A stretch of DNA of 64,000 bases, from positions 1 to 64,000 of the IMG/VR virus record IMGVR_UViG_3300028829_003504. One strand, given 5' to 3'. The translations under genes were made by a program, and so were the position numbers. Shown one piece after another: positions 8,661-29,187 of the stretch (position 1 is its first letter; each line of letters opens with the position of its first letter). The notes beneath the pieces are model-generated. The model was not told the origin of the DNA, did not search any database, and worked only from the letters and a program-made list of their open reading frames with translations.

Positions 8661-9335
8661 ATGTTAGTTTCGTTATCAGCTAAAGCCAAAGTGACAGACT
8701 TTCAGTGGTATACTTTTGAAGGTACGCGTAAGGTCTTGATAGAAAATGCAAACAGACACTACGACCTTGAGATAACCAAGGGTGAGCATTTCGGCCTAAA
8801 GTTAGGACGTACTCATTTCTGGCTGGTTCAAGTCGAAGAGGAATCTGGGGATATTATCAAATTTAAGTTAGAGCCTAAGAACGCTCGAACTATAGTTGAG
8901 AAGTCAAAAGGATTCAGCGGTAAGATAGGTAAGACTAAAGTCCAGCCTGGTACTTTCGGCAAAGAGCGTAAAGCCTCAGGTAAACCTCTTGGTACTACTC
9001 CTACTAGCGCATCACCTTTACCTGGTGGTGTACCTAGAGAAAATAAAGTAATAACCAAAGCAGTTAAAAAGATTAAGTTCCCAGGAGCCTCTAAGATAAC
9101 TCATGTTATGACTCAACGTGCCATCGAGGGTGAGATTTACCATTACTATGATATCAGCGACACATTACCTGGTTATCGACGTAAGCATAAACTTACTGTT
9201 AGAGAGGTAGGTAACTGGGCTAAAGATATTGAAGCCGCCGCCGAGTCTTCTATCAAGGGTATTGATGCTGAGATTGGTACGGTAAGATGGAAAGGTAAGT
9301 TGATAAGAGTGATGGCCTTATTAGAATTGGAGTAG
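8661..9335 (+). CDS. basic protein with MLVSLS leader, putative internal head protein
   Basis: 224 aa, Lys-rich; N-terminal domain aligns with an internal domain of 31602..34613 and with 10628/11337/25016. Confidence 0.6.
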   Translation: MLVSLSAKAKVTDFQWYTFEGTRKVLIENANRHYDLEITKGEHFGLKLGRTHFWLVQVEEESGDIIKFKLEPKNARTIVEKSKGFSGKIGKTKVQPGTFGKERKASGKPLGTTPTSASPLPGGVPRENKVITKAVKKIKFPGASKITHVMTQRAIEGEIYHYYDISDTLPGYRRKHKLTVREVGNWAKDIEAAAESSIKGIDAEIGTVRWKGKLIRVMALLELE

Positions 9336-9338
9336 TCT

Positions 9339-9860
9339 ATGTCAATGAAGAAGACTCTTGAGTTAGCCAAATCACTTAACGAAGGAGATAAGACTCCCTT
9401 ACCTAAATGGTTATGGAAAGTCGAGTCAATGCCTGCCTTCGACGGTGTGACATTAGAGCCTGAATACATCCAACAGTTTGGACTACCTTTTCCTAAGTTC
9501 GATACAGGTAATCAAATTGAAGTCGCCGGCGCTACGTTAACGTTTCCCGGTAAAATAGATGTGTCAAGTGTCACTATGCTTATACACGAAGACAATAAAG
9601 TCCGTGCATTGAAATATATATTCCAATGGATGTCAAACATTAGAAACCCAGTTACTGGGGGTTACTTCTTACCATCTAGATACAAGAAAGGTATTAACGT
9701 AGTCCTCCATGATAACAAGGGTGATCCCTTAGCCAAAGCTTCTTTACGAGGCGTATGGCCTAGTGCCATCCAAGATTGGGAACTGGTATATAACGATGAT
9801 GGGTTTCATCAAGTCAGTGTTCAACTGGAAGTTGACGCTTCCTACTTAGAAATTCTGTAA
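9339..9860 (+). CDS. second tail-tube-fold protein (tube initiator-like)
   Basis: FPGK...HED...W...GVWP pattern parallels the tube at 8077. Confidence 0.7.
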   Translation: MSMKKTLELAKSLNEGDKTPLPKWLWKVESMPAFDGVTLEPEYIQQFGLPFPKFDTGNQIEVAGATLTFPGKIDVSSVTMLIHEDNKVRALKYIFQWMSNIRNPVTGGYFLPSRYKKGINVVLHDNKGDPLAKASLRGVWPSAIQDWELVYNDDGFHQVSVQLEVDASYLEIL

Positions 9861-9871
9861 AGGTAAATATA

Positions 9872-10618
9872 ATGCAAATACTAAAAGAAAAGCTAGCCGC
9901 TGGAGGTATATGTTTTGGTGAAGGGTCTCCAGAACATGTTACTATAAACCCAATTGGCATGACTGAACTCAGTATGCTATCTGAGTCAGCCACACTAAAC
10001 AAACATGTAACCTTTGTCGATGCAATACTAAGTACGGTTGAAGGCGTTGAAGATCATCAATTATCAATGGGTGAGTTCTTCCAAATAGTCGCATACCACA
10101 GAATACACGCATTCCCTGATAGCCCAATTGAATTGAACTGGACTTGCTCTGGATTTATGTTCGTAGACCTTGACGGCAATGAACTACGTTACACTGATGT
10201 AGACAGCAAAGACAAAGAGTTCCAGAAGACTTTACGTCCTAAGCCTTGTGGTCAAACTTGTCACGTTGACTTTGATTACGATGATTTAGATATATTGATA
10301 ATGCCTGAGCGTGAACTGCCTGAAGGCTTCTCCGTTCCTACTTCCTCTCTATATGCTGAGTATGTAGAGTTATCTAATGACCCTAAACTGGCTAAGATTA
10401 TTCCAGCGGCCCAATGGATTGCACACGGTAATACGATTGAAGATAAGATTAAATTCTTACGCAAGCAAACAGACTTAAAGATGTTTGACCAAGCCAGTCG
10501 ATTGAATCATGAACTTAGACATGGGCCTCTCAACAAATTACACGCAGCTTGTCCTAATTGCGGCACCCAAGTTGAACAAGGTATAGTGTTCGACCAATAC
10601 TCATTTTTTAGACAATAA
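9872..10618 (+). CDS. putative baseplate hub assembly protein (T4 gp26/gp51-like)
   Basis: LSMGEFFQIVAYHRIHAFP, CPNCG zinc ribbon, C-terminal FF; paralog of 12222..13175. Confidence 0.6.
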   Translation: MQILKEKLAAGGICFGEGSPEHVTINPIGMTELSMLSESATLNKHVTFVDAILSTVEGVEDHQLSMGEFFQIVAYHRIHAFPDSPIELNWTCSGFMFVDLDGNELRYTDVDSKDKEFQKTLRPKPCGQTCHVDFDYDDLDILIMPERELPEGFSVPTSSLYAEYVELSNDPKLAKIIPAAQWIAHGNTIEDKIKFLRKQTDLKMFDQASRLNHELRHGPLNKLHAACPNCGTQVEQGIVFDQYSFFRQ

Positions 10619-10627
10619 GAGACTACC

Positions 10628-11275
10628 ATGAGAATATTTATAAGCGAATCAGCTAGACTAACTAAGTCACTACGCGGCGCTACGGCCTATATCGCCAAGT
10701 CCAGTATCAAAGTAGGTGATGACGACCACGAAAGTAATATCAAGAAGGGTGAGAAGTTTTACTTGAAGACTCTTGGTAAGAAACATTACCTAATGGACGT
10801 TGAAGGTAAAGAGATTTATCAATTCGTTATTGATGAAAAGACTTTCAAAGCTTTGGACAACAAACATGAAGCCTTTAAGGATGAAGGTAAAGCGGCTACG
10901 CAGAAGAAAGGTAAAGCCAAGACTCATACTGACGGTGCTACTGGTATGAAAGAGAAACGCAAGCAAGCTAAATCGTCTAAAGGCGCCAATACGAAAAAGA
11001 TTAAGTCCTTATTGGACGATGGTTATAATAAAAATCTAGGCATCGGAGAATCAGATGCTAAGACTGCTATATCTGATGCTTTTAAAGGTAAGACCCACGC
11101 CCAAAGAGTTAAAGACATTAACAAGTCTAAGCTAGGTTTACACGAATATGATCCGGAAGACTTTGACTTGGACGAATCGGAATACGATAAGTTAGTTGGC
11201 AAACTTAAGAAAAAGCTAATAGACGTTTCTAAGAATATGGACTCAGGTGATAAACTCTCTGACTTCGGTCTATAG
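10628..11275 (+). CDS. basic protein with MRIFISES leader (paralog 1)
   Basis: 215 aa, Lys-rich; near-identical N and C termini to 11337..12221. Confidence 0.75.
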   Translation: MRIFISESARLTKSLRGATAYIAKSSIKVGDDDHESNIKKGEKFYLKTLGKKHYLMDVEGKEIYQFVIDEKTFKALDNKHEAFKDEGKAATQKKGKAKTHTDGATGMKEKRKQAKSSKGANTKKIKSLLDDGYNKNLGIGESDAKTAISDAFKGKTHAQRVKDINKSKLGLHEYDPEDFDLDESEYDKLVGKLKKKLIDVSKNMDSGDKLSDFGL

Positions 11276-11283
11276 TAAACTAG

Positions 11284-11340
11284 ATGGATTGGGAAACCTC
11301 AATCCGTGGCACTCGATTCAACCTTAAGAGACTACCATGA
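11284..11340 (+). pseudogene. 18-codon remnant of the 5' end of the 12222 gene
   Basis: MDWETSIRGTRF versus MDWETAIHDTRF; its TGA overlaps the ATG at 11337. Confidence 0.7.
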
Positions 11341-12221
11341 GAATATTTATAAGCGAATCAGCTAGATTAACTAAATCACTCAGAGGCGCTACGGCCTATG
11401 AGGCCAAGTCTACTGTTAAAGTAGATGACGACGATCACGAAAGTAATATAAAGAAGGGTGAGAAGTTCTATCTTAAGAAGTTAGGTAAGAAGCATTACGT
11501 TATCGACCTTGAGAAAGAAGGCGGTAAGACTGTCTATTACCAATTTGCAGTCGATGAAGCCACTTACGATAAGTTAGCCAAGAAGCATACGAACACCGAT
11601 GATGCTCCTGGTATGAAAGAGAAACGCGAGCAGGCAGCAGGTCGTAAGGCTACTCAAAATAAGAAAGCTTCGGTCGGTTTAAAGTACACCCCCGCTAAAG
11701 GCAAGCACGACAACGTGGACCCTAAAATAAAGAAGAAGCTTAGAAAAGAATTCGAGACTGAGATTAAAGAGTTGAGGAAAACGGGCCAACACTTTGTAGG
11801 TAAACCTGGACTCAAGAAAGCCAAAGCTGCTTTCAAGAAAGCCATGGACCTCGCTGAGAAAGCAGGTAAAGCCAAAGACGGTAAAGGCAAGATTGCTCAA
11901 CGTGCAGACACTAAGAAAACTCAGAATAAAAAGAAAATCGTAACTGGAATCTTAAAGAATAAGAAATATCAAGAATTGGGCATGGGGGATTCCGCGAATC
12001 AGAGCGCCATGCTAGACGCGTTTAAAGGTAAGACACATGACCAGCGAGTTAAGGCTATTAAGAAATCAAATTTAGGCCTTTTCGAGTGGGACGAAGACGA
12101 TGATATATCTGAAAAAGAGCATAACGCTACTTTGGCAAAGATTAAGTCTGAACTTATTGATCTGTCAAAAAATATGAATAAAGGCGATAAGCTTTCCGAC
12201 TTCGGCCTAGATTATTTATAG
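11337..12221 (+). CDS. basic protein with MRIFISES leader (paralog 2)
   Basis: 294 aa; has an extra K/A-rich middle segment relative to paralog 1. Confidence 0.75.
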   Translation: MRIFISESARLTKSLRGATAYEAKSTVKVDDDDHESNIKKGEKFYLKKLGKKHYVIDLEKEGGKTVYYQFAVDEATYDKLAKKHTNTDDAPGMKEKREQAAGRKATQNKKASVGLKYTPAKGKHDNVDPKIKKKLRKEFETEIKELRKTGQHFVGKPGLKKAKAAFKKAMDLAEKAGKAKDGKGKIAQRADTKKTQNKKKIVTGILKNKKYQELGMGDSANQSAMLDAFKGKTHDQRVKAIKKSNLGLFEWDEDDDISEKEHNATLAKIKSELIDLSKNMNKGDKLSDFGLDYL

Positions 12222-13175
12222 ATGGATTGGGAAACCGCAATCCATGACACTCGGTTCAGAGACATAGGCGATCTCCCCACGGGTTTTCGCCTATACTCGT
12301 TTAAAGAGCTTATGATTCGTCCATTTAGTTTGAACGAACTATACATAGTCGGTGCAGGACATAGGGCAGATTCAATACGCCATGTTATCCGTGCCGCAGA
12401 AATCGTAACGTCATGTGATGTAAACCAATTAACGGATGGTGACTTCGCTTATGTGCTTGCTTGGCTAAGAATCAATTCATATCCTGAAAGCCCAATCAAT
12501 GCCGTATGGCAATGTAAAAGTAAATCACTCCTCGACCACAAACGTAGACCTCTTAATATGTCGAAAGCAGCAGGCAAGTCCTTTGCCGAGATTGATAGAC
12601 TAGGTTGGACGTTAAAAGAATGTGGCCACGAAAACGTTTACCTGGCACATAATGCCTCAATGGACATTACTGTACTGGAAGACTTCGACTTACCCGAGGG
12701 ACTTTCGTTTCCTACTGTATCGACATTAGTTGAAGCCGAAGACCTAATGGAAGAACCTGAGTTCACCCATATACTTGATGCACTACGTTGGATTAAAGAG
12801 GGTAAAACCCTTAGAGATAAATACGAATATGTCAAATCACTAGGTAACTTAGAACTCTTTAACAAAGCCAAAGAAATGGCTAACGGTAGAATAACCCACG
12901 GTATAACTGAGACCGTACCAATTGAATGTATGATGTGTAGCACTAAGCAAACCGTATTCGATAAAGTACCATCGTTTATAAAGTTCTTTGCCGCTTACAC
13001 TGAAACCTCTCTGTACAACATTCAGTATAACCTGACTACGGCCTTTAATATATTCATTGAAGATACTATGCCTAGTCAGAAACTTTTATACATGCACAGT
13101 TCTTACGTTAAGGACCTTAACGAGAAGAAAGAGCGTGACGCCTTGAAAGCCGCTACGCGACGCAAAGGTAGATAG
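12222..13175 (+). CDS. putative baseplate hub assembly protein (gp26/gp51-like)
   Basis: LPTG...IRPF, LTDGDFAYVLAWLRINSYP, CMMC; paralog of 9872..10618. Confidence 0.6.
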   Translation: MDWETAIHDTRFRDIGDLPTGFRLYSFKELMIRPFSLNELYIVGAGHRADSIRHVIRAAEIVTSCDVNQLTDGDFAYVLAWLRINSYPESPINAVWQCKSKSLLDHKRRPLNMSKAAGKSFAEIDRLGWTLKECGHENVYLAHNASMDITVLEDFDLPEGLSFPTVSTLVEAEDLMEEPEFTHILDALRWIKEGKTLRDKYEYVKSLGNLELFNKAKEMANGRITHGITETVPIECMMCSTKQTVFDKVPSFIKFFAAYTETSLYNIQYNLTTAFNIFIEDTMPSQKLLYMHSSYVKDLNEKKERDALKAATRRKGR

Positions 13176-13189
13176 ATAGAGGAGCATGT

Positions 13190-15757
13190 ATGTTAGACCC
13201 AATTGAACTCATGGCCGAACGCGCCGGCGAGTTGGAACAGACATACGAAAATAATGTAATGCTACCGGGGCTTCCTGCTCCGGGAGTGTTAGCGTTTAAA
13301 TCTGAACCCGGACTCCCTACACCTTATACAGGAAGAGGCAGTGTGGATAGAGGAGTAATCGAAGGCCAGCTAGTTCCAAATGATAACGCCGACCTTAGAC
13401 TTGCACCGTCGACTGGGATGGTATCGCCTGGTAACAACATGACGTTATCCGAACTGGACAACGTTTATGATGCAGCTACCGAAGAAGTCTTAGATGCCTT
13501 ATTCTTAATAGATGAAGACCTTAATAGCGGTCTTGATATCCTTTCAAACTCTATCACTACTTATAATGGTAAGAGTATGCGATTGCAAATACAGCAACGC
13601 GATATGATGAAAGAAATGGGTAAGATATTTAGAGATTGGTGGGAAGTAACGCAACGTGACCGCAACAAGCCAGAAGTTCTAAAGACTAAGGATACTGATG
13701 TAGGTCCAGGTACTGGCTTAGCTGTTGATACAAGTCAATCTACCAATAGCGATTCAGGTAGTCTACTTGATGGCCTAAACATAGGTGGTAGTAGATCAAG
13801 TAAAGACGATGACAAAAAGAATAACAGACGTAACGAGAAACGAAGCAAGCGACCTAAAGGTAAGTGGGCTGGACTGGCTTGGGATGTTAAAACTTATGGA
13901 GGTAAAGCATTAGACTTCGCTAAAGGTAATGCAGGCAAGTTAGCGTTAGGCGCTGGTGCAGGCTATTTAGCGTATAATGCTATATCCGATAATCGTGAAG
14001 AAGACGTCATGACTCCGGAGAAGGTATTGGCTAAACAGAAGGCTGAGCGTACTGGAACTATGATGGACCCTCAATCTGGTGAACAAATCACTTGGGATGA
14101 GTATGACAGTAAGTATGGGCAAGCGAAAACTAGCGAAATTAATGCCTCTACCACTGCGCCAGCTACCTCTACCACACCCGTATTAGAGCCAGGGCAGGCA
14201 TCAATTCCTAGTCGTGTACAAGACGTATCAGATGGCAGTTTTAGCACTTCTCAGATGATTGGTGCTGCGGGGTTGACAGCAATGGGAGGAACGGTAGCAG
14301 CACAGCACATGCGTAATAGGTCTACTATTCCTAAGCCTACAGCAGGTTTACTTCCACAGAGCCCAGATGTCCCCAAAGCTAATACTCCTAAGACTAATGC
14401 TAAAGTACCTAAGAAAGGCATACTTAGCACTTTGAAGAAAGTTCCTAAGCTAGGTGCCTTGAATGCGGTACTAGGTGCTGCTAATATATACGGTACGGCT
14501 ACTGATGATTCTCTTGATAGCAGAGAGAAGACTACAGGCATAGCTGACTCTGTTGGTTCTATGGGAGCTTATGCAGGTGCAATGGCACTAGGGCCTTTAG
14601 CGCCTTTCGCATTAAGTGCCCTTGGTATTTCTGATGGTATTAGTTTTGCAGGCGACTTAATGGGTTACGATATACCTAGTTTAAGTGGTGCTGCTGGAAG
14701 TATGGTGAGCGGTGCTGCTGGAGGAATCTATGATGGTGCCTCTGCTGTCGGTGACTTCTTCGGATTCGGCGATGACCCTACAGAAGAAAATGTACAGACG
14801 GCCGCAGCCCTGACTAGTACTAATGCTAGCATACCTACTGGCGGTGACGAGTTTGGTGATATTAATATGGCACCACCAGTAGCTGCAACCCGTAAGTCTG
14901 AGAAGATTAAAGAACTCCAAAAGGTCGTCAGTAACAATCAAACTAATATGATTACTACCAATCCTGTGCAGGCTGTTGTTAATAAACAGAAGCAGGATGA
15001 AGGTATAGGTAAAGCCCTATCTTTATTAAAAGATAAGCCAGCACTTGAGCGTAAGAGTTCTGAATCCGCAGTGACTAGTAGTTTGTTTACCGCTGCGTCT
15101 GCAATGAGCCCGGGTCTTAGCTCAGGTGTAAATGCCATGTATGGAAATACTGATATATCTGATATAACCAACATGTATAGTTCTCCTACTACAGTGGCTA
15201 ATAATAGAAATACTTCCGGAGGTAGCGACTCAGTTATAAACGAAGGCTCCCTATATAGTAATAAGAAAATACACGAGACTCAAAGTTTCTTTGGTAGTAT
15301 GATGGACAGAGTTAGTTCTGCTGCAAGTAAAGCTTACGACTTCACACCAATGGGAATGATTAGTAACCTCAAGACATCGCCTGCTATTTCCAATTCACTG
15401 AGCAGCGTATCGAATAGTATACTAGGCGCCGACCCTAGTACGGTTAATACCAATCAGTCTCAGGCAGGTACTTCGAGTGTTGATACTGTTCAGGTAAATG
15501 CTAACACGGTTGAAGTTCTTCCTAAAGTCGAAAGCACTGAACGTTCTAATTTTACTACTATAAAAGAAGCATCTGCACCTATGGTTGATAGCACACCGCA
15601 AGCTCCTATCGTAGTACAAGCACCTGCTCCTAAAACCGCACCTAAACAGCATACTCGAATTATCAAACAAGTTGTTCAACCAAGACCGACTATTGATGAT
15701 ACACCTACCATGATTGGTAACGGCGGTCTTGGCCTTATAGGCAACACACTTGTATAG
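13190..15757 (+). CDS. putative tape-measure/baseplate hub-like protein
   Basis: 855 aa, G/A/S-rich with hydrophobic G/A helices, located among tail genes. Confidence 0.5.
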   Translation: MLDPIELMAERAGELEQTYENNVMLPGLPAPGVLAFKSEPGLPTPYTGRGSVDRGVIEGQLVPNDNADLRLAPSTGMVSPGNNMTLSELDNVYDAATEEVLDALFLIDEDLNSGLDILSNSITTYNGKSMRLQIQQRDMMKEMGKIFRDWWEVTQRDRNKPEVLKTKDTDVGPGTGLAVDTSQSTNSDSGSLLDGLNIGGSRSSKDDDKKNNRRNEKRSKRPKGKWAGLAWDVKTYGGKALDFAKGNAGKLALGAGAGYLAYNAISDNREEDVMTPEKVLAKQKAERTGTMMDPQSGEQITWDEYDSKYGQAKTSEINASTTAPATSTTPVLEPGQASIPSRVQDVSDGSFSTSQMIGAAGLTAMGGTVAAQHMRNRSTIPKPTAGLLPQSPDVPKANTPKTNAKVPKKGILSTLKKVPKLGALNAVLGAANIYGTATDDSLDSREKTTGIADSVGSMGAYAGAMALGPLAPFALSALGISDGISFAGDLMGYDIPSLSGAAGSMVSGAAGGIYDGASAVGDFFGFGDDPTEENVQTAAALTSTNASIPTGGDEFGDINMAPPVAATRKSEKIKELQKVVSNNQTNMITTNPVQAVVNKQKQDEGIGKALSLLKDKPALERKSSESAVTSSLFTAASAMSPGLSSGVNAMYGNTDISDITNMYSSPTTVANNRNTSGGSDSVINEGSLYSNKKIHETQSFFGSMMDRVSSAASKAYDFTPMGMISNLKTSPAISNSLSSVSNSILGADPSTVNTNQSQAGTSSVDTVQVNANTVEVLPKVESTERSNFTTIKEASAPMVDSTPQAPIVVQAPAPKTAPKQHTRIIKQVVQPRPTIDDTPTMIGNGGLGLIGNTLV

Positions 15758-15765
15758 GATATAAT

Positions 15766-16874: not shown

Positions 16875-16882
16875 GAACTATT

Positions 16883-20660: not shown

Positions 20661-20693
20661 CTATTTTAATATTAAAGTCATAGAGGCTCAAGC

Positions 20694-21062: not shown

Positions 21063-21066
21063 CATT

Positions 21067-21411: not shown

Positions 21412-21845
21412 AAGAAGTGGACGTGGCCTCTATAAAGACTACATGCCTGGAGTATGGTAACTTCAAGTTTAGCGTATCTTCCAACTGTACCTCTCTTGAC
21501 CATCCTGATAGCCTAGAAGTATCAGTGGATTTTAGCTGTAAGGTTAATACTAATAGTCAATTCTTTATAGTTATCGTAGTACCTAATAGTAATAAAAGGA
21601 ATTTAGATTTCCACATGACCTATCCGTCAGACTTGGAACCTCATACAACTTCACATGAAATAGTCCCAGTAGTCAACTATGAGGAGCTAACATCATGTGT
21701 TTCTATGATAATAGGAATACTCGGTCGGGTTTATGGCCAAACCTACAAAGAACTACATCAATTTAATAGCCCTCTATTGTCTATTATATCTATACTTTTC
21801 TTTGAAGTAATAGGCTTTAGCGGTATAGGAAATGAGCCTCATTAA
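21408..21845 (+). CDS. hypothetical protein
   Basis: 145 aa ORF overlapping the previous stop (ATGA). Confidence 0.5.
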   Translation: MKEVDVASIKTTCLEYGNFKFSVSSNCTSLDHPDSLEVSVDFSCKVNTNSQFFIVIVVPNSNKRNLDFHMTYPSDLEPHTTSHEIVPVVNYEELTSCVSMIIGILGRVYGQTYKELHQFNSPLLSIISILFFEVIGFSGIGNEPH

Positions 21846-21924
21846 ACTTATATTCGTAATTTAATCAATGATGAAAGCAACAGCTTTTGTTACACTTTAA
21901 AGTAACTGAGAGGTAACCTCCCCT

Positions 21925-23601
21925 ATGAAGGCACATACTATTGATGTCTTAGGTAGATGTACACTACCTGGCCTACCAAATAACGACCTAGATGCGGCTC
22001 CAAAGCTCTACGTCGATTTAGCGACGGCTGGTGGTATATTTATCACAGATATTACACCGACTAACGAAGGTGGTAACAACATAGTTGGTCTAAAGACCTA
22101 TGAAGCAGATACAATTCCTGCGGATTTCTTAATGACCAATGGCATTACAAACGTTGCGGCTATACGCATCCATTTCCTAGCTGAGCCAAAACATGCGCTA
22201 TATAAGCTTGCAGTTATAGCTAAGTACGCAGATGGAGCTAGCGAAGTTGCGGCACAAAGTATTACACAACATGCAAACGACATGCGTATGTATGAAGGCT
22301 ACGTGGATATAGTAGTTGACGACCAGAAGATGGAAGAAACTATTACACTGGTTTCTTCTACAGGGACAGAAGCTACTGTCCACCTTGATCTATTAATAGG
22401 CGGTCCTGAAGTTTCGGCCTTTACTATCGGTTCATTGCCTGATGGTCAAACTGAACTTAAGGAAGGTGACGTAGTTTCAGTTAGCGGCGTAGTATCTAAC
22501 GATGCAACCTCGGTTAAGGTCCTTAACTCGGGAGTATCAATAGATTCCCATAACTTAAGTATAGGTGAAGAAGACTCAGGCGGTGCGGGTTCTCGTACTT
22601 TCTCAGGCTCTGTGACTGTATCTAGCCTAAGTGGATCGCTGGTAGCACAAGCTGTCGGTACGAACATGTTAGGTACTGAAGGCGATGCGTTTGATAGTAA
22701 CTCTGTTACGTTAAACCAGACACATCCTTCAATAGGTGCTGCAACTTATTCTTATCCTGGTACGCAAGAAGCAATTAAGGAAAGCGAAAGCGTAGGCATT
22801 GACGTTACTATTACTGATGCCGACGACTACGACTATTCTGCCGCAGCGGGTCTTTCGATTGACTCGCCTTCGGACTATTCAGTTTCTAAAACTGTTACCC
22901 GTGAAGATGAAACGATTCAATATAGCGTAGATGCTGACCTATTAACTATCACAGCCACTAAAGAAAGTAACGGTGCTGTTACTGTTAAGACTTTTAGCAT
23001 TAACGTAGTAAACACTCCGCCTAGTGCTGCCCTTTCTTTCGTAGGCAATCCAGCCCGTTTAAGATCTGATGCCAATGGAGAGACGTATAAGTTACAGATT
23101 ACTCCTAACCAACCTCTACTTAACGCACCTGACGCCCTTATGTCTGCTGCTAATGCTGGTGAGTTTACAGGTAATTGGTCTACATCTGGTCAGAACTACC
23201 GTCACAATTTTAAAGTTGTCGATACTGACTTACGTGGCGTACATAATTGGGATGGTCTTATTATTACAGGTCTTTCTGGTATACAGGCAAGCACAATCAC
23301 TAGTGGTTCTATCTATGAAATAGGTGGCTTCCTTGCTCGTACGCTTACTATACCTGCTTTAGCTCAGTTCGCCTCGATAGGTGCATTCGTATCAGACTTC
23401 TCTAAAGTCCGCGCAATGTACGTTGGTGCCGACGAGTTAGTCCGTCAGGTTGATTTGGCTCAAGTTGTTAAAGCATTCACTATCGTAGATTCAGGCGGCG
23501 CTTTAGATAACAACGGTGATCACCTATTCTTAAATGATGCAAACTTTGCAGGTACTAATACAACAGGTACCCTGCAGGTTGAAGTGGAGGAGTTAGAATA
23601 A
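21925..23601 (+). CDS. Ig-like repeat virion/fibre protein
   Basis: 558 aa, T/S/G/V-rich beta repeats, preceded by a TAATTT motif. Confidence 0.55.
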   Translation: MKAHTIDVLGRCTLPGLPNNDLDAAPKLYVDLATAGGIFITDITPTNEGGNNIVGLKTYEADTIPADFLMTNGITNVAAIRIHFLAEPKHALYKLAVIAKYADGASEVAAQSITQHANDMRMYEGYVDIVVDDQKMEETITLVSSTGTEATVHLDLLIGGPEVSAFTIGSLPDGQTELKEGDVVSVSGVVSNDATSVKVLNSGVSIDSHNLSIGEEDSGGAGSRTFSGSVTVSSLSGSLVAQAVGTNMLGTEGDAFDSNSVTLNQTHPSIGAATYSYPGTQEAIKESESVGIDVTITDADDYDYSAAAGLSIDSPSDYSVSKTVTREDETIQYSVDADLLTITATKESNGAVTVKTFSINVVNTPPSAALSFVGNPARLRSDANGETYKLQITPNQPLLNAPDALMSAANAGEFTGNWSTSGQNYRHNFKVVDTDLRGVHNWDGLIITGLSGIQASTITSGSIYEIGGFLARTLTIPALAQFASIGAFVSDFSKVRAMYVGADELVRQVDLAQVVKAFTIVDSGGALDNNGDHLFLNDANFAGTNTTGTLQVEVEELE

Positions 23602-24008
23602 TGACTGCATTTACTGACTTTATTCAAGTAGAACTTCCTAAGAGACCTTACTTAGAAAGTGACGTACCTAAGAACTCTGTTATTATACGTAATGGAGCAG
23701 GCCCTCGTCAATTAGATGGTATACAACTGCTACCTGGGCAGATCATTATGAACATAGGTGGGACGGTACAAGCTGTGGCTATTGAGGATGTAGCGGGTAA
23801 TACCTCCACATTCGTGCAGCTGGTAGAAACCGCCTCGGCTCAATGGACATTGAATCACGGAGGTAGCTCCGAGAATGTGTTAATTGCACTGTATGATACC
23901 TCTGGACGTTATATGATTCCTGATGAAATCACAATTGTAGACGGTGATACAATTACTGTAGACTTTGGTACTGCTATCGACGGTAAAGCCGTTGTGCTAT
24001 ACTTCTAG
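23601..24008 (+). CDS. tail-fibre-associated protein
   Basis: WTLNH...V.ALYD..G....PD.I..VD.DTITVDF...G.AVV motif typical of fibre-associated domains. Confidence 0.6.
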   Translation: MTAFTDFIQVELPKRPYLESDVPKNSVIIRNGAGPRQLDGIQLLPGQIIMNIGGTVQAVAIEDVAGNTSTFVQLVETASAQWTLNHGGSSENVLIALYDTSGRYMIPDEITIVDGDTITVDFGTAIDGKAVVLYF

Positions 24009-24057
24009 TAGGTATTAGCCTAGTGTGGGGACTTCGGTCCTCGCTCTTGGCTTTAAT

Positions 24058-24546
24058 ATGGGAAAGCTTAACAGGAAGATAGTAACCGAAGGGTTGACTA
24101 AAGCTTCTACTAACTACTGGGTTAAAAAATTATATTCCGTGTATACGGAAGTTGGACTCCAGAAGAAAACAAAGGGCGCTATTCGTGCCGACGTAATTGC
24201 TTTCAATATGAAGCAGCAGTTTATTATTAGTGAAATCAAAAGTTGCTGGAGTGACTATACCAGTGATAATAAATGGTCCACATATCTACCTTTCTCCAAC
24301 AAAATGTACTTTGTTTTACATAGAGGACTATGTGATACAGACAAAGGCAAAATCATTTGTGAAGACGCCAAGTTCCAAGGCGTAGGCGTAATGCGCTTAG
24401 GTACAGATGGTACTCTATCCGTTGTCCAGAATGCTAAGAGCAGAGAGTTAGACCCTGACCGAAAACAATGGCTTTTAACTAAACTAGCTTGGCGTGGCGG
24501 GCAAAGCCGCTACAATATGAAAAAAATTAAAAGAGTCTACATATAG
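24058..24546 (+). CDS. MmcB-like PD-(D/E)xK nuclease
   Basis: RADVIA...ISEIKS..SDY.SDNKW..YLPFSNKMYF; ATG at 24058 preferred over GTG at 24025. Confidence 0.75.
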   Translation: MGKLNRKIVTEGLTKASTNYWVKKLYSVYTEVGLQKKTKGAIRADVIAFNMKQQFIISEIKSCWSDYTSDNKWSTYLPFSNKMYFVLHRGLCDTDKGKIICEDAKFQGVGVMRLGTDGTLSVVQNAKSRELDPDRKQWLLTKLAWRGGQSRYNMKKIKRVYI

Positions 24547-24553
24547 GACTACT

Positions 24554-24751
24554 ATGAAGCTAAACGAATTTCCAGTTGGTTGTACTGAAAACGGAACAAC
24601 TCTTTACGTAGACGTTGCGGCGGCTACTTCGCAAGAAGCACAGGCATTTATTGAACTCAATAGGCCTAGACTTGATATCATACATGTAGGTGAGTCATTA
24701 GGTGAGGTCAAAGTACCTAAGCCTATGATAATGCGACTACGCGCCTCATAA
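24554..24751 (+). CDS. hypothetical protein
   Basis: 65 aa with AGGA RBS. Confidence 0.6.
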   Translation: MKLNEFPVGCTENGTTLYVDVAAATSQEAQAFIELNRPRLDIIHVGESLGEVKVPKPMIMRLRAS

Positions 24752-24759
24752 GGAATACT

Positions 24760-25014
24760 ATGAAGCCCATTGAAATAAGCCTTTCGGCATCTCCCGTTGA
24801 AAAGAAAACAATAGAACTAGCTTTACTGAAAGAGTCACTAGAGGCAGCTAAAGAGAAGCTACCTATCTTAGTGAAAGCTTTACGTATGCAAGACTCTCAA
24901 AAAGGTAAGACTAAATACCGCTTACAGATAAAGAAACTTAACTTGAACATTAAGAAGAAATCCAAGAAAATCCAAAAAGTTTCTTTAACCCTACGTAAAA
25001 CTAAACGAGGTTAA
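24760..25014 (+). CDS. small basic coiled-coil protein with ISLS leader
   Basis: 84 aa, MKPIEISLS start, Lys-rich. Confidence 0.6.
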   Translation: MKPIEISLSASPVEKKTIELALLKESLEAAKEKLPILVKALRMQDSQKGKTKYRLQIKKLNLNIKKKSKKIQKVSLTLRKTKRG

Positions 25015-25015
25015 T

Positions 25016-25918
25016 ATGCAGACATTTATTGTAGAGTCAGCTGCAAAAGTACGAAAAGGAAATCTACCTAAAGAAGCCGTTGCGTATCGCTCAGTAGGAC
25101 GCGTTAAAGTAGAAGATGATAAGCATGAATCCGATATTAAGAAGGGCGAGAAATTCTACTTGATGGAATTCCGTAAGAAGTTTTATCTGCTTGACGTTGA
25201 AGGCAATGATATATACAAGTTTGCCATTGATGAAAAGACCTACAGACGTATATCTAAGAAGCATACCTTGTTGTCGGCTCCTAAATTTAAGTCAAAGCCG
25301 CTACCTGTCAAATTCAATAAACCCAATTACGGTTTCATTAAATCCGAAGTCCGTAAAGCAATGCAGCTTGTTAATGACGACCCCGGCCTTGCAGGTATCA
25401 TTGATGTCCTATACCGCGAAGACCATACGCATATAATCGTATACGGTTCGGCCAAAGGCTCGACTGTTACCTTGACTCACGTTTCTAAAGGCAAATGGTC
25501 TGCGGGTAGTTACGACGGAGAAAGTGTTGAGTATAGAAGCCCTACTAAACTTGAAGTAGCGTTTGCTCAAGCTAAAGCTATGTCGTTACCTAGCTGGAAG
25601 GGAGGTAAGCCTACGGCTAAAGCCGCTCCTGGTGATTTATTGAAGTATTTAGAAGACAACGTACATTTTAATTCCAGAACCGCCAACGTAAATTCTTTCC
25701 TTGTATCAGGTGATAAGAACCGTATTGACATTGATGCCGAAACAAGAGGCTATCCTGAAGATGCAGCGCGAGCCTTGCGTAGTAAACTAAACTCAAGTAA
25801 GATCAAGCAGTTGATTACTGAGGGTGGCTGGAAAGAAACTAATTTTAGCTCAGGCGAGGGCGACGATAGCAACTATGCTGGAGACCATGCCGCCTCCTCT
25901 ATAACTTACAAGCGATAG
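25016..25918 (+). CDS. basic protein of the 10628/11337 family
   Basis: Shares HES.IKKGEKFYL...DVEG..IY.F.IDEKT with 10628. Confidence 0.75.
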   Translation: MQTFIVESAAKVRKGNLPKEAVAYRSVGRVKVEDDKHESDIKKGEKFYLMEFRKKFYLLDVEGNDIYKFAIDEKTYRRISKKHTLLSAPKFKSKPLPVKFNKPNYGFIKSEVRKAMQLVNDDPGLAGIIDVLYREDHTHIIVYGSAKGSTVTLTHVSKGKWSAGSYDGESVEYRSPTKLEVAFAQAKAMSLPSWKGGKPTAKAAPGDLLKYLEDNVHFNSRTANVNSFLVSGDKNRIDIDAETRGYPEDAARALRSKLNSSKIKQLITEGGWKETNFSSGEGDDSNYAGDHAASSITYKR

Positions 25919-25925
25919 GATACTC

Positions 25926-26402
25926 ATGGAAATTTTCATTAGTGAGAGCAAGACTCGTATAAGCGAAAGCACGTTACCTAAGTTTAAGAAGCCTCGTAAG
26001 CAAGGGGCCGTCATACCTTACATGTTCGACGATAAAGGTAATATACTGATTGTCCTTATCAAGTCAAAGCATGGCGGTAACTGGGGTCTTCCTAAAGGTG
26101 CTATTGAAAAGCATCTTACCAATAAGAAAAGTGCAAAGATGGAAGCACTTGAAGAAGCAGGACTTAAAGGTAAAATGGGTATGAAGATAGGTGAATATGA
26201 ATACGTTAAAGGTCTTACTGAACGTAAGCAGCATGTACGCGTATACCCTATGTTAGTTAAGAAGATGCTAAAGACCTACCTAGAAAGCAAATGGCGGATA
26301 CGTGAAGTAATGCCTGCACATAAAGCTATTAAGAAACTCAAAAAGAAGCAGTCTGTTTTGGTCAAGGCCCTTGTTTTAGAATTGTCTAAGCAAAGACTAT
26401 AA
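25926..26402 (+). CDS. Nudix hydrolase
   Basis: WGLPKG...AKMEALEEAG Nudix box; MEIFISES leader. Confidence 0.85.
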   Translation: MEIFISESKTRISESTLPKFKKPRKQGAVIPYMFDDKGNILIVLIKSKHGGNWGLPKGAIEKHLTNKKSAKMEALEEAGLKGKMGMKIGEYEYVKGLTERKQHVRVYPMLVKKMLKTYLESKWRIREVMPAHKAIKKLKKKQSVLVKALVLELSKQRL

Positions 26403-26483
26403 GACCTTACATGGTGCAGTACACGTAGATTAGCTCCATCGGCGCTAACTTAAATAATAAGAATTAAACCTTAAGGCCAAAAT

Positions 26484-27125
26484 ATGTTACCTATATCCAT
26501 AAAATTAAACCCTCTAGACTCAGAATCGAATCTTCTTCAATACCTTCCTGACTTTGAAGAAGGGGAATCTACCTCGTCTCTCATAGAGAGTACAGAGAAG
26601 AAATTTGGTTCTATTGTAGTTTACCTACATGCGCTAGGTTCTTATAACTACCGTATTGAATGGTTCAGCAAAATGACAGGTGCATCTACTAGTCTTGTCA
26701 GATCATCTAAAGGAAAGTACTTAGTTGTACGTAAATGGGCAGCTATTAAAAAGATGCCTGATGTAAGCTCACTGTTTACAAGCCGCAAACAGGCGCTAAT
26801 ACACTTTTTATCTAATGTGGACGTTATCAAAGCTGCGGATACTACTATGAATTCCGCAAAGCAGTTATGCTTAGAACTATTTGCCAAACAGGAAGGCTTG
26901 AAAGAGATTAAGCCTACACGCTTCCCTAGAATTAGAATGCAGGGTGCAATAGGAAGACGTATTGAAGTACGTGCACCTAATAGTACGAAAGACAGAGTAG
27001 TAGCCTATGGAGTTCTACTACAAATAATAGGAAACCTCGCCGAAGTTAAGATAACTGAACGAATCGATCTTTCTAACCCGAGTGATTTCCAGAAATTCCC
27101 AATGAAGCAGATTTACTTACCTTAA
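26484..27125 (+). CDS. hypothetical protein
   Basis: 213 aa ORF. Confidence 0.65.
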   Translation: MLPISIKLNPLDSESNLLQYLPDFEEGESTSSLIESTEKKFGSIVVYLHALGSYNYRIEWFSKMTGASTSLVRSSKGKYLVVRKWAAIKKMPDVSSLFTSRKQALIHFLSNVDVIKAADTTMNSAKQLCLELFAKQEGLKEIKPTRFPRIRMQGAIGRRIEVRAPNSTKDRVVAYGVLLQIIGNLAEVKITERIDLSNPSDFQKFPMKQIYLP

Positions 27126-27135
27126 GGGGAAATTC

Positions 27136-27516
27136 ATGAGACCTATACTAATTAGTCTATCTAAATCAGGGTTTAGTACAGACCCTAAGAGAATCCTCTC
27201 TCGCATAAAAGATTACGTAGCAGGACGACCTACCAATTTCGCATCACATGGTAACTTATGCTACGGCGTAGTGGCGGACTATATTAAAGCTCTAGGTGAT
27301 ACCTCGGGATACACTATAGTTCTTTTAGGTTCTGGTGACTATAGTATACATGGCATATTACTTGATCCAAAAGGCGAAGTAGTAGCAGATAAACAAGAAG
27401 GTTTAGGTAAATGGGATGGTAAGAAGTACAACAAACGTAAAGTGCTTACTAGAAAAGGAATTAAGACTTTACCTAAACCTATCTCATACTCAGTGGTTCT
27501 AAAGGAATCACTTTAG
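27136..27516 (+). CDS. hypothetical protein with ISLS leader
   Basis: 126 aa, MRPILISLS start; GNLCY...H pattern could be a papain-like/transglutaminase-like core (weak). Confidence 0.55.
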   Translation: MRPILISLSKSGFSTDPKRILSRIKDYVAGRPTNFASHGNLCYGVVADYIKALGDTSGYTIVLLGSGDYSIHGILLDPKGEVVADKQEGLGKWDGKKYNKRKVLTRKGIKTLPKPISYSVVLKESL

Positions 27517-27525
27517 GAAAAATAC

Positions 27526-29187
27526 ATGAAACAATTTACATCAATCAGTGCTGTAGATACTGACTCGGTGAAGGCATTTTCTCAGGTAATGGTATACTTG
27601 GCATACATGCGAGGAATCGGTGCCTTATCAAACTCTGCTTTGAAAACACTAGCCTCTCTAGAATCTAGATCTTATCCTTTCCTTGAGAGATTCAAAATAA
27701 GAAAGCCCTTATTCAAACGTATTATTGAAGATACAAGTAACAATGAATACGACGAAGATGATTGGTTGGCCTTAGTTAAAATACTTAGAGCCAAAAAAGA
27801 TATCATACATGCTGAGACTGACATAGACACTCACTTCTATAAACTAATATTCGATTGTGCTAGCTATATGATACGAGGCACGGATAGTGCATTAGTCCGT
27901 ATAGGTAAGGCTGTGTCTCACTTCCAAGACCCGAACTTGGGCCGAATGTTCTTAACATCCGTTGCAGACCAAGGTGACATATTAACTAAATTGAAGACAA
28001 TAGTACGACGGATGGTTAAACGCGATGGCCTTGAGATAGACGCCGACGAACGTAAAGTACTTAAGGTTAAAAAGCCCGATCTACTTAAACAGTACAACAA
28101 GTTACGCCGCGATCTTAATGCCGTACCTAAAGACTTTGTGTCCTCCTATATAAGACAAACTGGTAATAGTTTAGTAGCGATACATGAAGTTATTGACCAA
28201 CTCCATAAAGCAGGTATCAAGCACCATAGTATACCTAGAGGTTTCAAAGGCTATTTGGATGATACTCTTTCATTTTATACAGAAGCTAAGTTGAAGCTTA
28301 ACGGGGTTCCTGCAGGTGAAGTCTTAATGAATCCCTCATACGATCCTAAGAAAGATAACGGGTACGTGTGTCAGGCTAAAGCTCCTATGGCAAAAGACTA
28401 TTCTCGTATATATACGGTCAAATTCAAATCAGATAGCACAAAGAAGAAATTTGATGCTGTAGGTAATCTATCTACTAAGGTAAGTTCTATTAGGGCCAAG
28501 TGGCTCTCTGACTTACGTAAAGGTACTGCCGAACGTGCTGCTGTTCTAGCTATGTGCTGTGAACTGATTTACTTGACTTCCGCCAGAATAGGTTCAACTA
28601 AAGGATCGACGGCTGGTGAGAAAACTTACGGTTTTACCTCACTGATAGTAGGCCACTATAAGAAGAAAGGTAAAGCTAGATTACTTGAATATAAAGGTAA
28701 GAAATCACAAACCCAGAGACATACCATTCCAGATAACCCCTTAAGTTCAAAAATCTGTATTGAGTATTTAGACGAAATGGTCATAGGCAAGAAACGCGCT
28801 GACCGATTGATTACTTTTAGGGGCAGGCCTGTCTCGCCTAAGTCCATTAACGATTATCTAAGAACTCTAGGTGTACCTGAAGGCGTTACTATACATAAGT
28901 TTAGAACTTTACGGGGGACTATGATAGCACGTAAAGCTATAGATAGAAGCCCTTTCAAGAATAGAACAAAACAACCTACACAGAAACAAGTAAACGATTG
29001 GTTGAAGAAAAGTTTAGAGAAGGTAGCCAAAGAGTTAGGCCACTTTAATAATGGTAAACTTACTGTTAATACCGCTATACAGAATTACATCGACCCGTCC
29101 ATACTTGAAGAATTCTATGAAGAAGCAGGAGTAAGACCTCTTGCTGTAATTGAACGTAGTATCAAGCTAGCCAAAGGCAATGTGTAA
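27526..29187 (+). CDS. DNA topoisomerase IB
   Basis: Catalytic pentad in order: SARIG (R), YKGKK (K), HKFRT (R), ELGH (H), QNYIDP (Y). Confidence 0.85.
   Translation: MKQFTSISAVDTDSVKAFSQVMVYLAYMRGIGALSNSALKTLASLESRSYPFLERFKIRKPLFKRIIEDTSNNEYDEDDWLALVKILRAKKDIIHAETDIDTHFYKLIFDCASYMIRGTDSALVRIGKAVSHFQDPNLGRMFLTSVADQGDILTKLKTIVRRMVKRDGLEIDADERKVLKVKKPDLLKQYNKLRRDLNAVPKDFVSSYIRQTGNSLVAIHEVIDQLHKAGIKHHSIPRGFKGYLDDTLSFYTEAKLKLNGVPAGEVLMNPSYDPKKDNGYVCQAKAPMAKDYSRIYTVKFKSDSTKKKFDAVGNLSTKVSSIRAKWLSDLRKGTAERAAVLAMCCELIYLTSARIGSTKGSTAGEKTYGFTSLIVGHYKKKGKARLLEYKGKKSQTQRHTIPDNPLSSKICIEYLDEMVIGKKRADRLITFRGRPVSPKSINDYLRTLGVPEGVTIHKFRTLRGTMIARKAIDRSPFKNRTKQPTQKQVNDWLKKSLEKVAKELGHFNNGKLTVNTAIQNYIDPSILEEFYEEAGVRPLAVIERSIKLAKGNV

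What the first reader, a model, noticed from the sequence alone, without database searches (positions are those of the whole stretch)
8661..29187. Shared N-terminal [I/V/T]-S-x-S leader on unrelated basic proteins: candidate capsid-targeting and maturation-protease signal
The N termini are MLVSLS-AK (8661), MRIFISES-AR (10628, 11337), MKPIEISLS-AS (24760), MQTFIVES-AA (25016), MEIFISES-KT (Nudix, 25926), MRPILISLS-KS (27136) and MKQFTSIS-AV (Topo IB, 27526). The same S-x-S followed by a small residue recurs in the acidic scaffold-like proteins (ASES-S, VSES-S, KSES-T, DSES-S, LSES-G, LSLS-M) and in 31602. Established analogy: T4 internal proteins carry a short capsid-targeting propeptide cut by gp21, and phiKZ gp175 cuts after S/A/G-x-E. 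Inference: this phage uses an S-x-S cleavage code and packages enzymes including Topo IB and a Nudix hydrolase for injection.
Basis: partly seen in the sequence, partly recalled or inferred. Interest (0 to 1): 0.72.

Follow-up and report, generated by a model that had tools for sequence, protein, structure and literature searches.

The report
Capsid-loading leader tag in jumbo phage
A giant phage puts the same short N-terminal tag, ending in Ser-x-Ser, on many different proteins (a topoisomerase, a Nudix hydrolase, DNA-binding-like basic proteins); the tag most likely marks them for loading into the capsid and trimming by the head protease, as phage T4 does with a different code.

Summary
An unbiased scan of the 262-kb genome ranks IFI, SES and FIS as the most enriched N-terminal tripeptides. 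A strict leader pattern hits 15 of 299 proteins, against about 3 expected.

Four of the eight carriers are paralogs that share a KMPT-N-like domain, so they are not all unrelated. Topo IB, Nudix and the 126-aa protein are independent. Their homologs in other phages keep a leader of variable length that always ends in small-x-Ser just before the conserved body.

The phage is an uncultivated relative of Erwinia Y3/Alexandra, PaBG, Lu11 and phiRSL1. Its head protease lies outside the window. It has a T4 gp21/herpesvirus-assemblin fold, and its family carries its own N-terminal S-x-S|F. The acidic scaffold-like proteins are crowded with the motif: S-x-S in some lineages, A-x-A in others, both here.

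Best reading is a T4-style capsid-targeting and cleavage tag with a new small-x-small specificity. It probably loads Topo IB, Nudix and a Tad6 (anti-Thoeris) polyprotein for injection. Cleavage and packaging are inferred, not shown. I found no paper describing this code.

The parts
8661..9335 (+). 224-aa basic protein (pI 9.8). Leader MLVSLS (8661-8678), then a KMPT-N domain.
   Evidence: Pfam PF20294, 30.3 bits against a cut-off of 28.9. Orthologs keep the leader: S17 MLILLSES|AR, Y3 MLIFLSES|AR, NCTB MLISLS|AA.
10628..11275 (+). 215-aa basic protein. Leader MRIFISES (10628-10651). KMPT-N-like paralog.
   Evidence: Its first 21 residues are identical to those of 11337.
11337..12221 (+). 294-aa basic protein, tandem paralog of 10628. 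Leader MRIFISES (11337-11360).
   Evidence: Weak PF20294 hit.
24760..25014 (+). 84-aa very basic protein (pI 10.5). Leader MKPIEISLS (24760-24786).
   Evidence: No family match.
25016..25918 (+). 300-aa basic protein. Leader MQTFIVES (25016-25039), with V in place of S at P3. N-terminal domain paralogous to 10628/11337.
   Evidence: 53% identity over 83 residues to 10628.
25926..26402 (+). 158-aa Nudix hydrolase. Leader MEIFISES (25926-25949) and a duplicated second site, RISES, ending at residue 15.
   Evidence: Pfam NUDIX 4e-08. The Nudix fold starts at residue 24. Homologs keep the leader: MEIFVSES|KLPKF, MRKILVSLS|NP, MMINVSLS|AK.
26484..27125 (+). 213-aa basic protein with a longer candidate leader, MLPISIKLNPLDSES (26484-26528).
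   Evidence: This assignment is weaker because no ortholog was checked.
27136..27516 (+). 126-aa basic protein of unknown function. Leader MRPILISLS (27136-27162).
   Evidence: Homologs keep the leader: MKLILFSLS|SG, MRQILISLS|GY.
27526..29187 (+). 553-aa type IB topoisomerase with a long N-terminal extension. Leader MKQFTSIS (27526-27549).
   Evidence: Pfam Topoisom_I 3e-22. Catalytic domain matches Deinococcus TopIB 2f4q. About 13 of the 19 other homologs, plus PaBG gp84 and the corrected L017 start, end a variable-length leader in [S/A/T]-[I/L/F/R]-S (once S-L-A) immediately before the conserved body, AV(D/E)xDSVKAF in the closer homologs.
726..2684 (+). 652-aa acidic scaffold-like protein (pI 4.1) with 5 S[EL]S sites, further A-[VL]-A sites and two CPSC zinc-ribbon motifs. 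Candidate multiply-cleaved core/scaffold protein.
   Evidence: S[ELIVQ]S 11 observed against 3.5 by shuffle, and A[ELIVQ]A 10 against 3.0, for this protein plus 4835 together. PHROGs calls the family 'ATPase', but no Pfam ATPase domain was found.
3461..4567 (+). Major head protein, 368 aa. Candidate propeptide cuts at SVS|IS (about residue 33-36), SSS|QQ (residue 61) and QSVS|TAAEQ (residue 71).
   Evidence: phrog_2522 matches residues 48-368. Alignment A1. The PaBG MCP loses about 20% of its mass on maturation (PMC7412058), which fits a cut near residue 61-71. Which site is used is not determined.
4835..5329 (+). 164-aa very acidic protein (28% D+E) with 4 S[EL]S sites. Candidate core/scaffold protein.
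9872..10618 (+). 248-aa protein with an internal MLSES|AT at residues 37-39. Possible longer propeptide.
   Evidence: Not followed further.
31602..34613 (+). 1003-aa polyprotein-like gene. Holds a Tad6 anti-Thoeris domain (residues 59-235) and an internal KMPT-N-like domain (538-582). Candidate cut sites flank the domains, including a fossil leader GMASEA|AAKF just before the KMPT-N domain.
   Evidence: Pfam PF25188 2.7e-42; PF20294 at 24.1 bits, below its cut-off. Sequence; paralogy.

Best explanation
The 5-15-residue leader has the consensus M-x-[I]-[L/F]-[I/V]-S-[E/L/Q]-S followed by Ala. I read it as the capsid-targeting propeptide of this phage clade and, at the same time, as a cleavage site of its prohead maturation protease.

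Proposed sequence of events:
1. Late in infection, tagged proteins co-assemble with the acidic scaffold/core proteins inside the prohead.
2. The protease is a Ser/His enzyme with a T4 gp21/herpesvirus-assemblin fold, encoded about 5 kb upstream of the window across the contig join. It cuts after small-x-small motifs. In this phage those are S-x-S in the leaders, and both S-x-S and A-x-A in the scaffold.
3. Cutting removes the leaders, chops the scaffold proteins into peptides, trims the N-terminal ~60-70 residues of the major head protein, and removes the protease's own N-terminal peptide.
4. The mature, mostly basic cargo stays with the DNA and enters the host on ejection. The cargo would include Topo IB, a DIPP-like Nudix hydrolase, several KMPT-N-domain proteins, and fragments of a polyprotein carrying a Tad6 anti-Thoeris domain.

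What is shown: the motif, its enrichment, its conservation in orthologs, the protease fold, and the motif density in scaffold-like proteins. What is inferred: cleavage at these sites, targeting by the leader, presence in virions, and injection.
For: 1. Enrichment at N-termini holds in an unbiased scan.

2. The leader is conserved in independent families.
- Topo IB homologs have leaders of 5-13 residues that end [S/A/T]-[I/L/F]-S directly before the conserved body. In one metagenomic relative the gene call had cut the leader off, and it reappears upstream as MLISLS|RV.
- Nudix homologs keep it.
- Homologs of the 126-aa protein keep it.
- KMPT-N proteins of S17, Y3 and NCTB keep it.

3. The protease family (alignment of 54-59 members) has a near-universal S-x-S-F after an N-terminal peptide of variable length, as expected for an autoprocessing site. 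It also has invariant H124 and S181.

4. The protease model (pLDDT 86.6) matches T4 gp21 best (Z 9.9, rmsd 2.8 A over 137 residues). Herpesvirus assemblins follow at Z 5-6.

5. Scaffold-like proteins are packed with the motif, beyond what their composition gives. S-x-S is 12-13-fold enriched in S17/Y3. A-x-A is 6-11-fold enriched in PaBG/Lu11/RSL1. Both are enriched here. Leaders shift the same way in Lu11 (MIISLA|AAA).

6. Virion evidence from a cultured relative: PaBG virion proteins are proteolytically processed, its MCP loses about 20% of its mass, and PaBG gp83, a KMPT-N-like homolog, is a virion protein (PMC7412058).

7. Context: all window carriers lie on the late structural arm and are basic. 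In a relative the same leader sits on a DarA_C protein, a domain of the P1 internal head protein DarA.

8. Precedent: T4 internal proteins are diverse anti-defence proteins that share only a capsid-targeting sequence (PMC3012670).
Against: - There is no direct evidence of cleavage or packaging for this virus. It is an uncultivated IMG/VR genome.
- The coarse PaBG virion proteome (14 Coomassie bands) lists neither Topo IB nor Nudix.
- At the best candidate MCP site, the closest relative (89% identical) has RQVA|T where this phage has QSVS|T, and PaBG has no clear motif there. The MCP cut cannot be pinned down.
- Gene 8661 and its orthologs sit inside the tail-tube module, not the head module.
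- Some leader hits outside the structural arm may be chance or wrong starts. Genome 153134, for example, has a TTG start and an internal Met.
- Co-folding of the protease with a 22-residue leader gave no answer either way.
- The Pfam S77 and S78 prohead-protease models do not match the genome.
Confidence: 0.6

Rival explanations
1. The S-x-S is a protease site only. The leader is just a short propeptide, for example one that keeps the enzymes inactive or marks the N-terminus. Targeting to the prohead would be done by something else: positive charge binding the acidic scaffold, or the KMPT-N domain.
For: The carriers are strikingly basic and the scaffold-like proteins strikingly acidic. A KMPT-N-like protein without any leader (genome 259616; PaBG homolog gp83) is a virion protein in PaBG. 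Many phiKZ/SPN3US head proteins are packaged without cleavage (PMC10052503).
Against: Besides S-x-S, the leader has a conserved hydrophobic I-[L/F]-I stretch at P6-P4 that the internal scaffold sites lack. That suggests the leader carries information beyond the cut site. Topo IB, Nudix and the 126-aa protein share nothing else.
Confidence: 0.2
2. The motif is a non-proteolytic N-terminal signal. It could be a beta-strand that docks onto an assembly partner or chaperone, or a site of Ser modification (a glycosyltransferase gene lies near the protease gene). On this reading the leader stays on the mature protein.
For: No cleavage data exist. A glycosyltransferase is conserved next to the head genes in all relatives.
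Against: This does not explain why the same tripeptide is crowded into the acidic scaffold-like proteins, why it sits at the protease's own N-terminus, or why Ser and Ala interchange between lineages. Ala cannot be phosphorylated or O-glycosylated.
Confidence: 0.1
3. The leaders are host signal-peptidase or secretion signals. Small residues at -3 and -1 fit the signal peptidase I rule.
For: S-x-S|A and A-x-A| fit the -3/-1 rule, and a hydrophobic stretch precedes the site.
Against: The leaders are 5-15 residues with only 3-5 hydrophobic positions, too short for a Sec h-region. The cargo is DNA enzymes (Topo IB, Nudix). The motif also occurs many times inside cytoplasmic acidic proteins.
Confidence: 0.03
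4. The pattern comes from chance plus paralogy. It would reflect duplicated genes and a Ser-rich composition.
For: Four of the eight listed proteins are paralogs. Generic S.S is only about 1.8-fold enriched at N-termini (27 vs 15).
Against: Three unrelated families keep the leader across phages with 30-75% identity and with different leader lengths. The unbiased scan ranks the leader tripeptides first. Shuffles never reach the observed count.
Confidence: 0.02

Closest known systems
Phage T4 capsid-targeting sequence (CTS) of internal proteins IPI-III/Alt, processed by prohead protease gp21
   Same: A roughly 10-residue N-terminal tag is shared by otherwise unrelated, mostly basic internal and anti-defence proteins. 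The tag ends at the protease site, and the same site recurs many times in scaffold/core proteins. The protease has the same fold (Z 9.9 to 5jbl).
   Different: From my own knowledge, T4 cuts after Glu in L/I-x-E. Here [LI].E is not enriched at N-termini (29 vs 25), and the site is small-x-small with Ser or Ala at P1. The protease is not recognised by Pfam S77 and carries a CxxC...CxH zinc-ribbon insert. The cargo differs: Topo IB, Nudix, KMPT-N proteins, Tad6.
phiKZ gp175 / SPN3US gp245 prohead proteases and their ejection-protein propeptides
   Same: Jumbo myoviruses in which many head and ejection proteins lose N-terminal propeptides at a three-residue motif, and where propeptides contain several copies of the motif (PMC10052503).
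   Different: Their motif is S/A/G-x-E or A-x-E, with P1 Glu. Here [SAG].E is depleted at N-termini (10 vs 26.6). This is a different phage clade: the nearest MCP relatives are Y3/Alexandra/PaBG/Lu11, and phiKZ-like phages do not appear among the hits.
Herpesvirus assemblin (maturational protease)
   Same: Same fold class (Z 5-6). From my own knowledge, a small residue at P1 and cleavage of (V/L/I)-x-A|S.
   Different: Only distant structural similarity. P3 here is small (S/A) rather than hydrophobic. There is no N-terminal tag system on cargo enzymes.
Phage polyvalent proteins / KMPT-N-domain proteins (Iyer et al. 2017, PMC5512222) and P1 Dar internal head proteins
   Same: KMPT-N domains occur, fused to SprT-like peptidase in PaBG and in a metagenomic relative. 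Anti-defence domains are predicted or known to be delivered with the DNA. A DarA_C protein carries the leader in a relative. P1 DarB has an N-terminal packaging signal (PMC9024508).
   Different: Here most cargo is encoded as separate small genes that share a tag, not as one giant polypeptide. P1 cuts its MCP at AMLE|S, a T4-like site, and its MCP shows no sequence similarity to this one.

Membership tests
T4-type CTS / gp21 system | Prohead protease with the gp21/assemblin fold | tested here: met
   AF2 model with pLDDT 86.6. Best PDB match is T4 gp21 5jbl: Z 9.9, rmsd 2.8 A over 137 residues.
T4-type CTS / gp21 system | Sequence membership in Peptidase_S77 (PF03420) | tested here: not met
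   No match in the whole genome at E <= 1. Pfam finds nothing in the protease.
T4-type CTS / gp21 system | Cleavage after Glu in L/I-x-E | tested here: not met
   [LI].E at N-termini is 29 observed vs 25 expected. The enriched motif ends in Ser.
T4-type CTS / gp21 system | Short N-terminal tag shared by unrelated internal proteins | tested here: met
   (sequence level only).
T4-type CTS / gp21 system | The tag is sufficient for encapsidation and is removed in the head | not testable with these tools
   Needs virion MS or reporter fusions. Co-folding gave no answer.
phiKZ gp175 / SPN3US gp245 system | Cleavage after S/A/G-x-E | tested here: not met
   [SAG].E at N-termini is 10 observed vs 26.6 expected.
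Assemblin-like serine proteases | Invariant catalytic Ser and His | tested here: inconclusive
   H124 and S181 (also E235 and S237) are invariant in 54 homologs. Their superposition on the gp21 catalytic residues was not checked.
KMPT-N domain proteins (PF20294) | Pfam score above the gathering cut-off of 28.9 bits | tested here: met
   8661 scores 30.3 bits and genome 243966 scores 46.3 bits. 11337 (17.2) and 31602 (24.1) fall below the cut-off but are linked by BLAST to 8661 directly (31602) or through 25016 (11337).
Sec signal peptides | n-h-c architecture with an h-region of about 7-15 hydrophobic residues | tested here: not met
   The leaders are 5-15 residues in all, with 3-5 hydrophobic positions.
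Type IB topoisomerase | Topoisom_I catalytic core | tested here: met
   PF01028 3e-22. Aligns to Deinococcus TopIB 2f4q over residues 300-533. Catalytic residues were not individually checked.

The most novel reading that the evidence does not exclude
A whole clade of jumbo myoviruses may use one programmable N-terminal tag. The clade includes Erwinia Y3/Alexandra, PaBG, Lu11, phiRSL1-like phages and many uncultivated relatives. The tag would be read by an assemblin-like protease with small-x-small specificity. It would load a changeable arsenal into the capsid and co-inject it: type IB topoisomerase (as poxviruses package theirs), a Nudix hydrolase, SprT/KMPT-N proteins, DarA_C, and a Tad6 anti-Thoeris domain released from a polyprotein. 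The tag alphabet switches between Ser and Ala from lineage to lineage, together with the scaffold's cut sites. If so, the list of leader-bearing genes would be a sequence-only read-out of each phage's injected proteome.
Probability: 0.45. Interest if true: 0.75.

Novelty: new variant of a known kind. Interest (0 to 1): 0.62.

Why it matters
If correct, one short motif predicts from sequence alone which proteins a large and poorly studied clade of jumbo phages packs into its capsid and injects. That predicted cargo includes a pre-made anti-Thoeris inhibitor, a topoisomerase and a Nudix enzyme.

It also gives the cleavage specificity of a prohead protease family that Pfam does not yet recognise. 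It would improve gene-start annotation, as one mis-called start was already found. And it offers a ready-made tag for loading foreign proteins into these capsids, as the T4 CTS does for T4.

The Ser/Ala switch between lineages is a natural experiment in protease-substrate co-evolution.

Tried and rejected
- Near-identity DNA search of the phage collection found no match.
- The search for related loci with single proteins returned only near-identical fragments. I used annotated phage records and protein searches instead.
- I followed phage P1 as a possible experimentally anchored relative, because of the PmgG-like annotations and its known MCP N-terminus. P1 gp23 is cut at AMLE|SVAAEM, a T4-like site, and shows no sequence similarity to this MCP. 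The lead was dropped.
- Complex prediction of the protease with the 22-residue leader of 10628 scored 0.01. The tool says this is no answer either way.
It was repeated without them.
- The ESM Atlas search of the 553-aa leader protein at genome 176533 gave no usable lead.
- The genome search on the 238-kb metagenome contig failed because the record is not held. Co-occurrence of protease and leaderless Topo IB could therefore not be tested as a negative control.
- Literature: I found no paper defining a cleavage motif for the Lu11/PaBG/Y3/RSL1 clade. The Y3 paper is not held, and the Lu11 genome paper did not come up in the search. Prior description there cannot be excluded.
- Genome 153134 (MLCSLS) is probably a false positive. 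It has a TTG start and an ATG 11 codons downstream.

Full report
**What the window is.**
The window is the first 64 kb of a 261,788-bp IMG/VR virus record with about 145-bp terminal repeats. It is an uncultivated jumbo myovirus. Bases 0.7-34.6 kb on the + strand hold the late structural arm: an acidic scaffold-like protein, a virion protein, the major head protein, sheath, tube and baseplate. The minus strand from 34.7 kb holds early and metabolic genes. The major head protein is 47% identical over its full length to that of Erwinia phage pEa_SNUABM_17 (Alexandravirus), and 53-58% identical over its C-terminal ~290 residues to Y3, PaBG, Lu11 and phage NCTB. Synteny with S17 is extensive.

**Observation.**
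Genome-wide tests:
- S[EL]S ending at residues 5-11 occurs in 12 of 313 ORFs, against 1.96 expected.
- A stricter leader pattern hits 15 of 299 proteins, against about 3 expected and at most 9 in 500 shuffles. This pattern was chosen after seeing the data.
- I therefore also scanned all 8000 tripeptides without prior choice. The three most enriched at N-termini are IFI, SES and FIS, which are the pieces of MxIFISES.

The Ser codons alternate between AGY and TCN, so the constraint is on the peptide. The consensus from 16 non-redundant leaders is P6 I, P5 L/F, P4 I, P3 S (15/16), P2 E/L/Q, P1 S (16/16), P1' A (9/16). Leader length is 5-15 residues.

- 26484 in the window.
- Genome 243966, 254996, 257618, 258370 and 259266. 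These sit just upstream of the window across the contig join, around the protease gene.
- 105239, 170623 and 176533 elsewhere in the genome.

Most carriers are basic, with pI 9.4-10.5.

**Correction on 'unrelated'.**
8661, 10628, 11337 and 25016 share a KMPT-N-like domain. So do genome 243966, genome 259616 and the middle of 31602. 10628 and 11337 are tandem paralogs. The independent instances in the window are this paralog family, Topo IB, Nudix, the 126-aa protein, the 84-aa protein and 26484.

**Conservation elsewhere.**
This is the strongest evidence.
- Topo IB homologs from metagenomes (28-76% identical) carry leaders of different lengths. In most, including nearly all of those at least 33% identical, the leader ends [S/A/T]-[I/L/F]-S directly before the conserved body, which reads AV(D/E)xDSVKAF in the closer homologs. 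Examples: MKKFLISLS|AV, MFTSIS|AS, MYISIS|AV, MQISLS|AS. PaBG gp84 reads MHTSLS|AV.
- One apparent exception was a mis-called start. The leader MLISLS|RV lies 22 codons upstream.
- Nudix homologs keep the leader (MEIFVSES|KLPKF, MRKILVSLS|NP, MMINVSLS|AK), while a distant homolog lacks it.
- Homologs of the 126-aa protein keep it (MKLILFSLS|SG, MRQILISLS|GY).
- Orthologs of 8661 and 243966 in S17, Y3 and NCTB keep it.

**The protease.**
By synteny with S17 gp141 (51% identity), the head maturation protease is genome 256827-257615. That is outside the window, about 5 kb upstream across the contig join.
- Pfam S77 and S78 do not match.
- An AlphaFold model built on 54 homologs (pLDDT 86.6) matches T4 gp21 best (Z 9.9). 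Herpesvirus assemblins follow at Z 5-6.
- H124 and S181 are invariant, and a CxxC...CxH insert is nearly invariant.
- Almost every family member has S-x-S-F after an N-terminal peptide of variable length. In this phage it reads S-E-A|F, and in its 88%-identical relative S-Q-S|F. That is what an autoprocessing site would look like.

**Scaffold-like proteins.**
The 652-aa and 164-aa acidic proteins that flank the head gene hold 9 S[EL]S sites. Across relatives the homologous proteins are crowded with small-x-small sites, beyond what their composition gives:
- S-x-S: 15 and 14 sites in S17 and Y3, against about 3.4 by shuffle.
- A-x-A: 16 sites each in PaBG and Lu11, against about 6 by shuffle.
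- Both kinds in this phage.

Lu11 leaders shift the same way (MIISLA|AAA). The code is therefore small-x-small, and the choice of Ser or Ala is lineage-specific. GC content explains this only partly: Lu11 and S17 have the same GC but different codes.

**Major head protein.**
Homologs share a conserved A-L-S|(E/S) site near residue 33 (SVS|IS here). Candidate sites also lie at residue 61 (SSS|QQ) and residue 71 (QSVS|TAAEQ). The PaBG MCP loses about 20% of its mass on maturation (PMC7412058), which fits a cut at 61-71. The site at 71 is not conserved as S-x-S even in the closest relative, so the exact cut is open.

**Cargo and context.**
- The Nudix fold begins at residue 24 and is closest to DIPP/Ap4A-type enzymes.
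- The Topo IB catalytic core aligns to bacterial TopIB.
- 31602 encodes a Tad6 domain (E 3e-42), then an internal KMPT-N-like domain preceded by GMASEA|AAKF. That looks like a fossil leader left by a gene fusion. Tad6 is a known inhibitor of ThsB of type I Thoeris (PMC13728456).
- In a 238-kb metagenomic relative, Topo IB is flanked by leader-bearing genes. One is a DarA_C protein, a domain of the P1 internal head protein DarA.
- PaBG gp83, a KMPT-N-like homolog, is a virion protein.
- T4 internal proteins are described as diverse anti-defence proteins that share only a capsid-targeting sequence (PMC3012670). That is the pattern seen here.

**Mechanism and limits.**
I conclude that the leader is most likely a capsid-targeting propeptide that ends at a site for an assemblin-like protease with small-x-small specificity. 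On that reading Topo IB, Nudix, the KMPT-N proteins and fragments of 31602 are head-internal, injected proteins. Confidence is 0.6. Cleavage, targeting, virion presence and injection are inferences. Co-folding gave no answer, and no virion data exist for this virus. The main rival reading is that the site is cut but targeting is done by charge or by the KMPT-N domain. The hydrophobic P6-P4 stretch, present in the leaders but not at the scaffold sites, argues that the leader carries extra information.

**Novelty.**
The principle is known from T4 and from phiKZ/SPN3US (PMC10052503). The specificity, the protease subfamily and the cargo set appear undescribed for this clade in the literature I could search. 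Two relevant papers could not be found or read in the library.

Noticed in passing
window 31602-34613 (+): This 1003-aa gene joins a Tad6 anti-Thoeris domain (PF25188, residues 59-235, E 2.7e-42) to an internal KMPT-N-like domain. A leader-like GMASEA|AAKF sits just before the second domain, which looks like a fusion of two formerly separate tagged genes.
   Followed up: partly
window 10628-11275 and 11337-12221 (+): Tandem paralogs with identical first 21 residues and similar C-termini. 11337 has an extra lysine-rich insert of about 80 residues.
   Followed up: partly
window 726-2684 (+): PHROGs labels this family 'ATPase', but Pfam finds no ATPase domain. The protein is acidic, with long D/E runs and two CxxC...CPSC zinc-ribbon-like motifs. 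The annotation carried by related phage records is probably a misnomer for a scaffold/core protein.
   Followed up: partly
genome 256827-257615 (outside the window; L004:15039-15827): The head maturation protease family has a nearly invariant CxxC...CxH insert (C191, C194, C206, H208). As far as I recall, T4 gp21 has no such insert. The family reaches mycobacteriophage cluster C (Bxz1-like), Rhodococcus and Gordonia phages at about 30% identity.
   Followed up: no
L017:2935-4659 and neighbours (238-kb metagenome contig): The Topo IB start is called 22 codons too late, which hides the leader MLISLS|RV. The neighbouring genes carry leaders too, including a DarA_C (PF18789) protein that begins MNILISVS|AP.
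   Followed up: partly
window 29248-30297 (+): A DAHP_synth_1 family enzyme (Pfam 2.7e-70; DAHP or KDO8P synthase type) sits directly after Topo IB in the late arm. It has no leader.
   Followed up: no
window 25926-25970 (+): The Nudix leader carries a duplicated cut motif (SES|KTRISES|T). Close relatives have either one copy (SES|KLPKF) or a variant pair (STS|SRISES|K).
   Followed up: partly
window 43278-44729 (-): A 483-aa ORF whose N-terminus (TDSYKLGHY) looks like nicotinamide phosphoribosyltransferase. This is judged by eye only, with no tool run.
   Followed up: no
genome 229915-231570, 237572-239884, 252283-253812 (outside the window): Besides the main sheath gene (window 6464-8065), the genome has a second sheath paralog and several sheath-like genes, as in the 'hairy' Erwinia phage Y3 group.
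   Followed up: no
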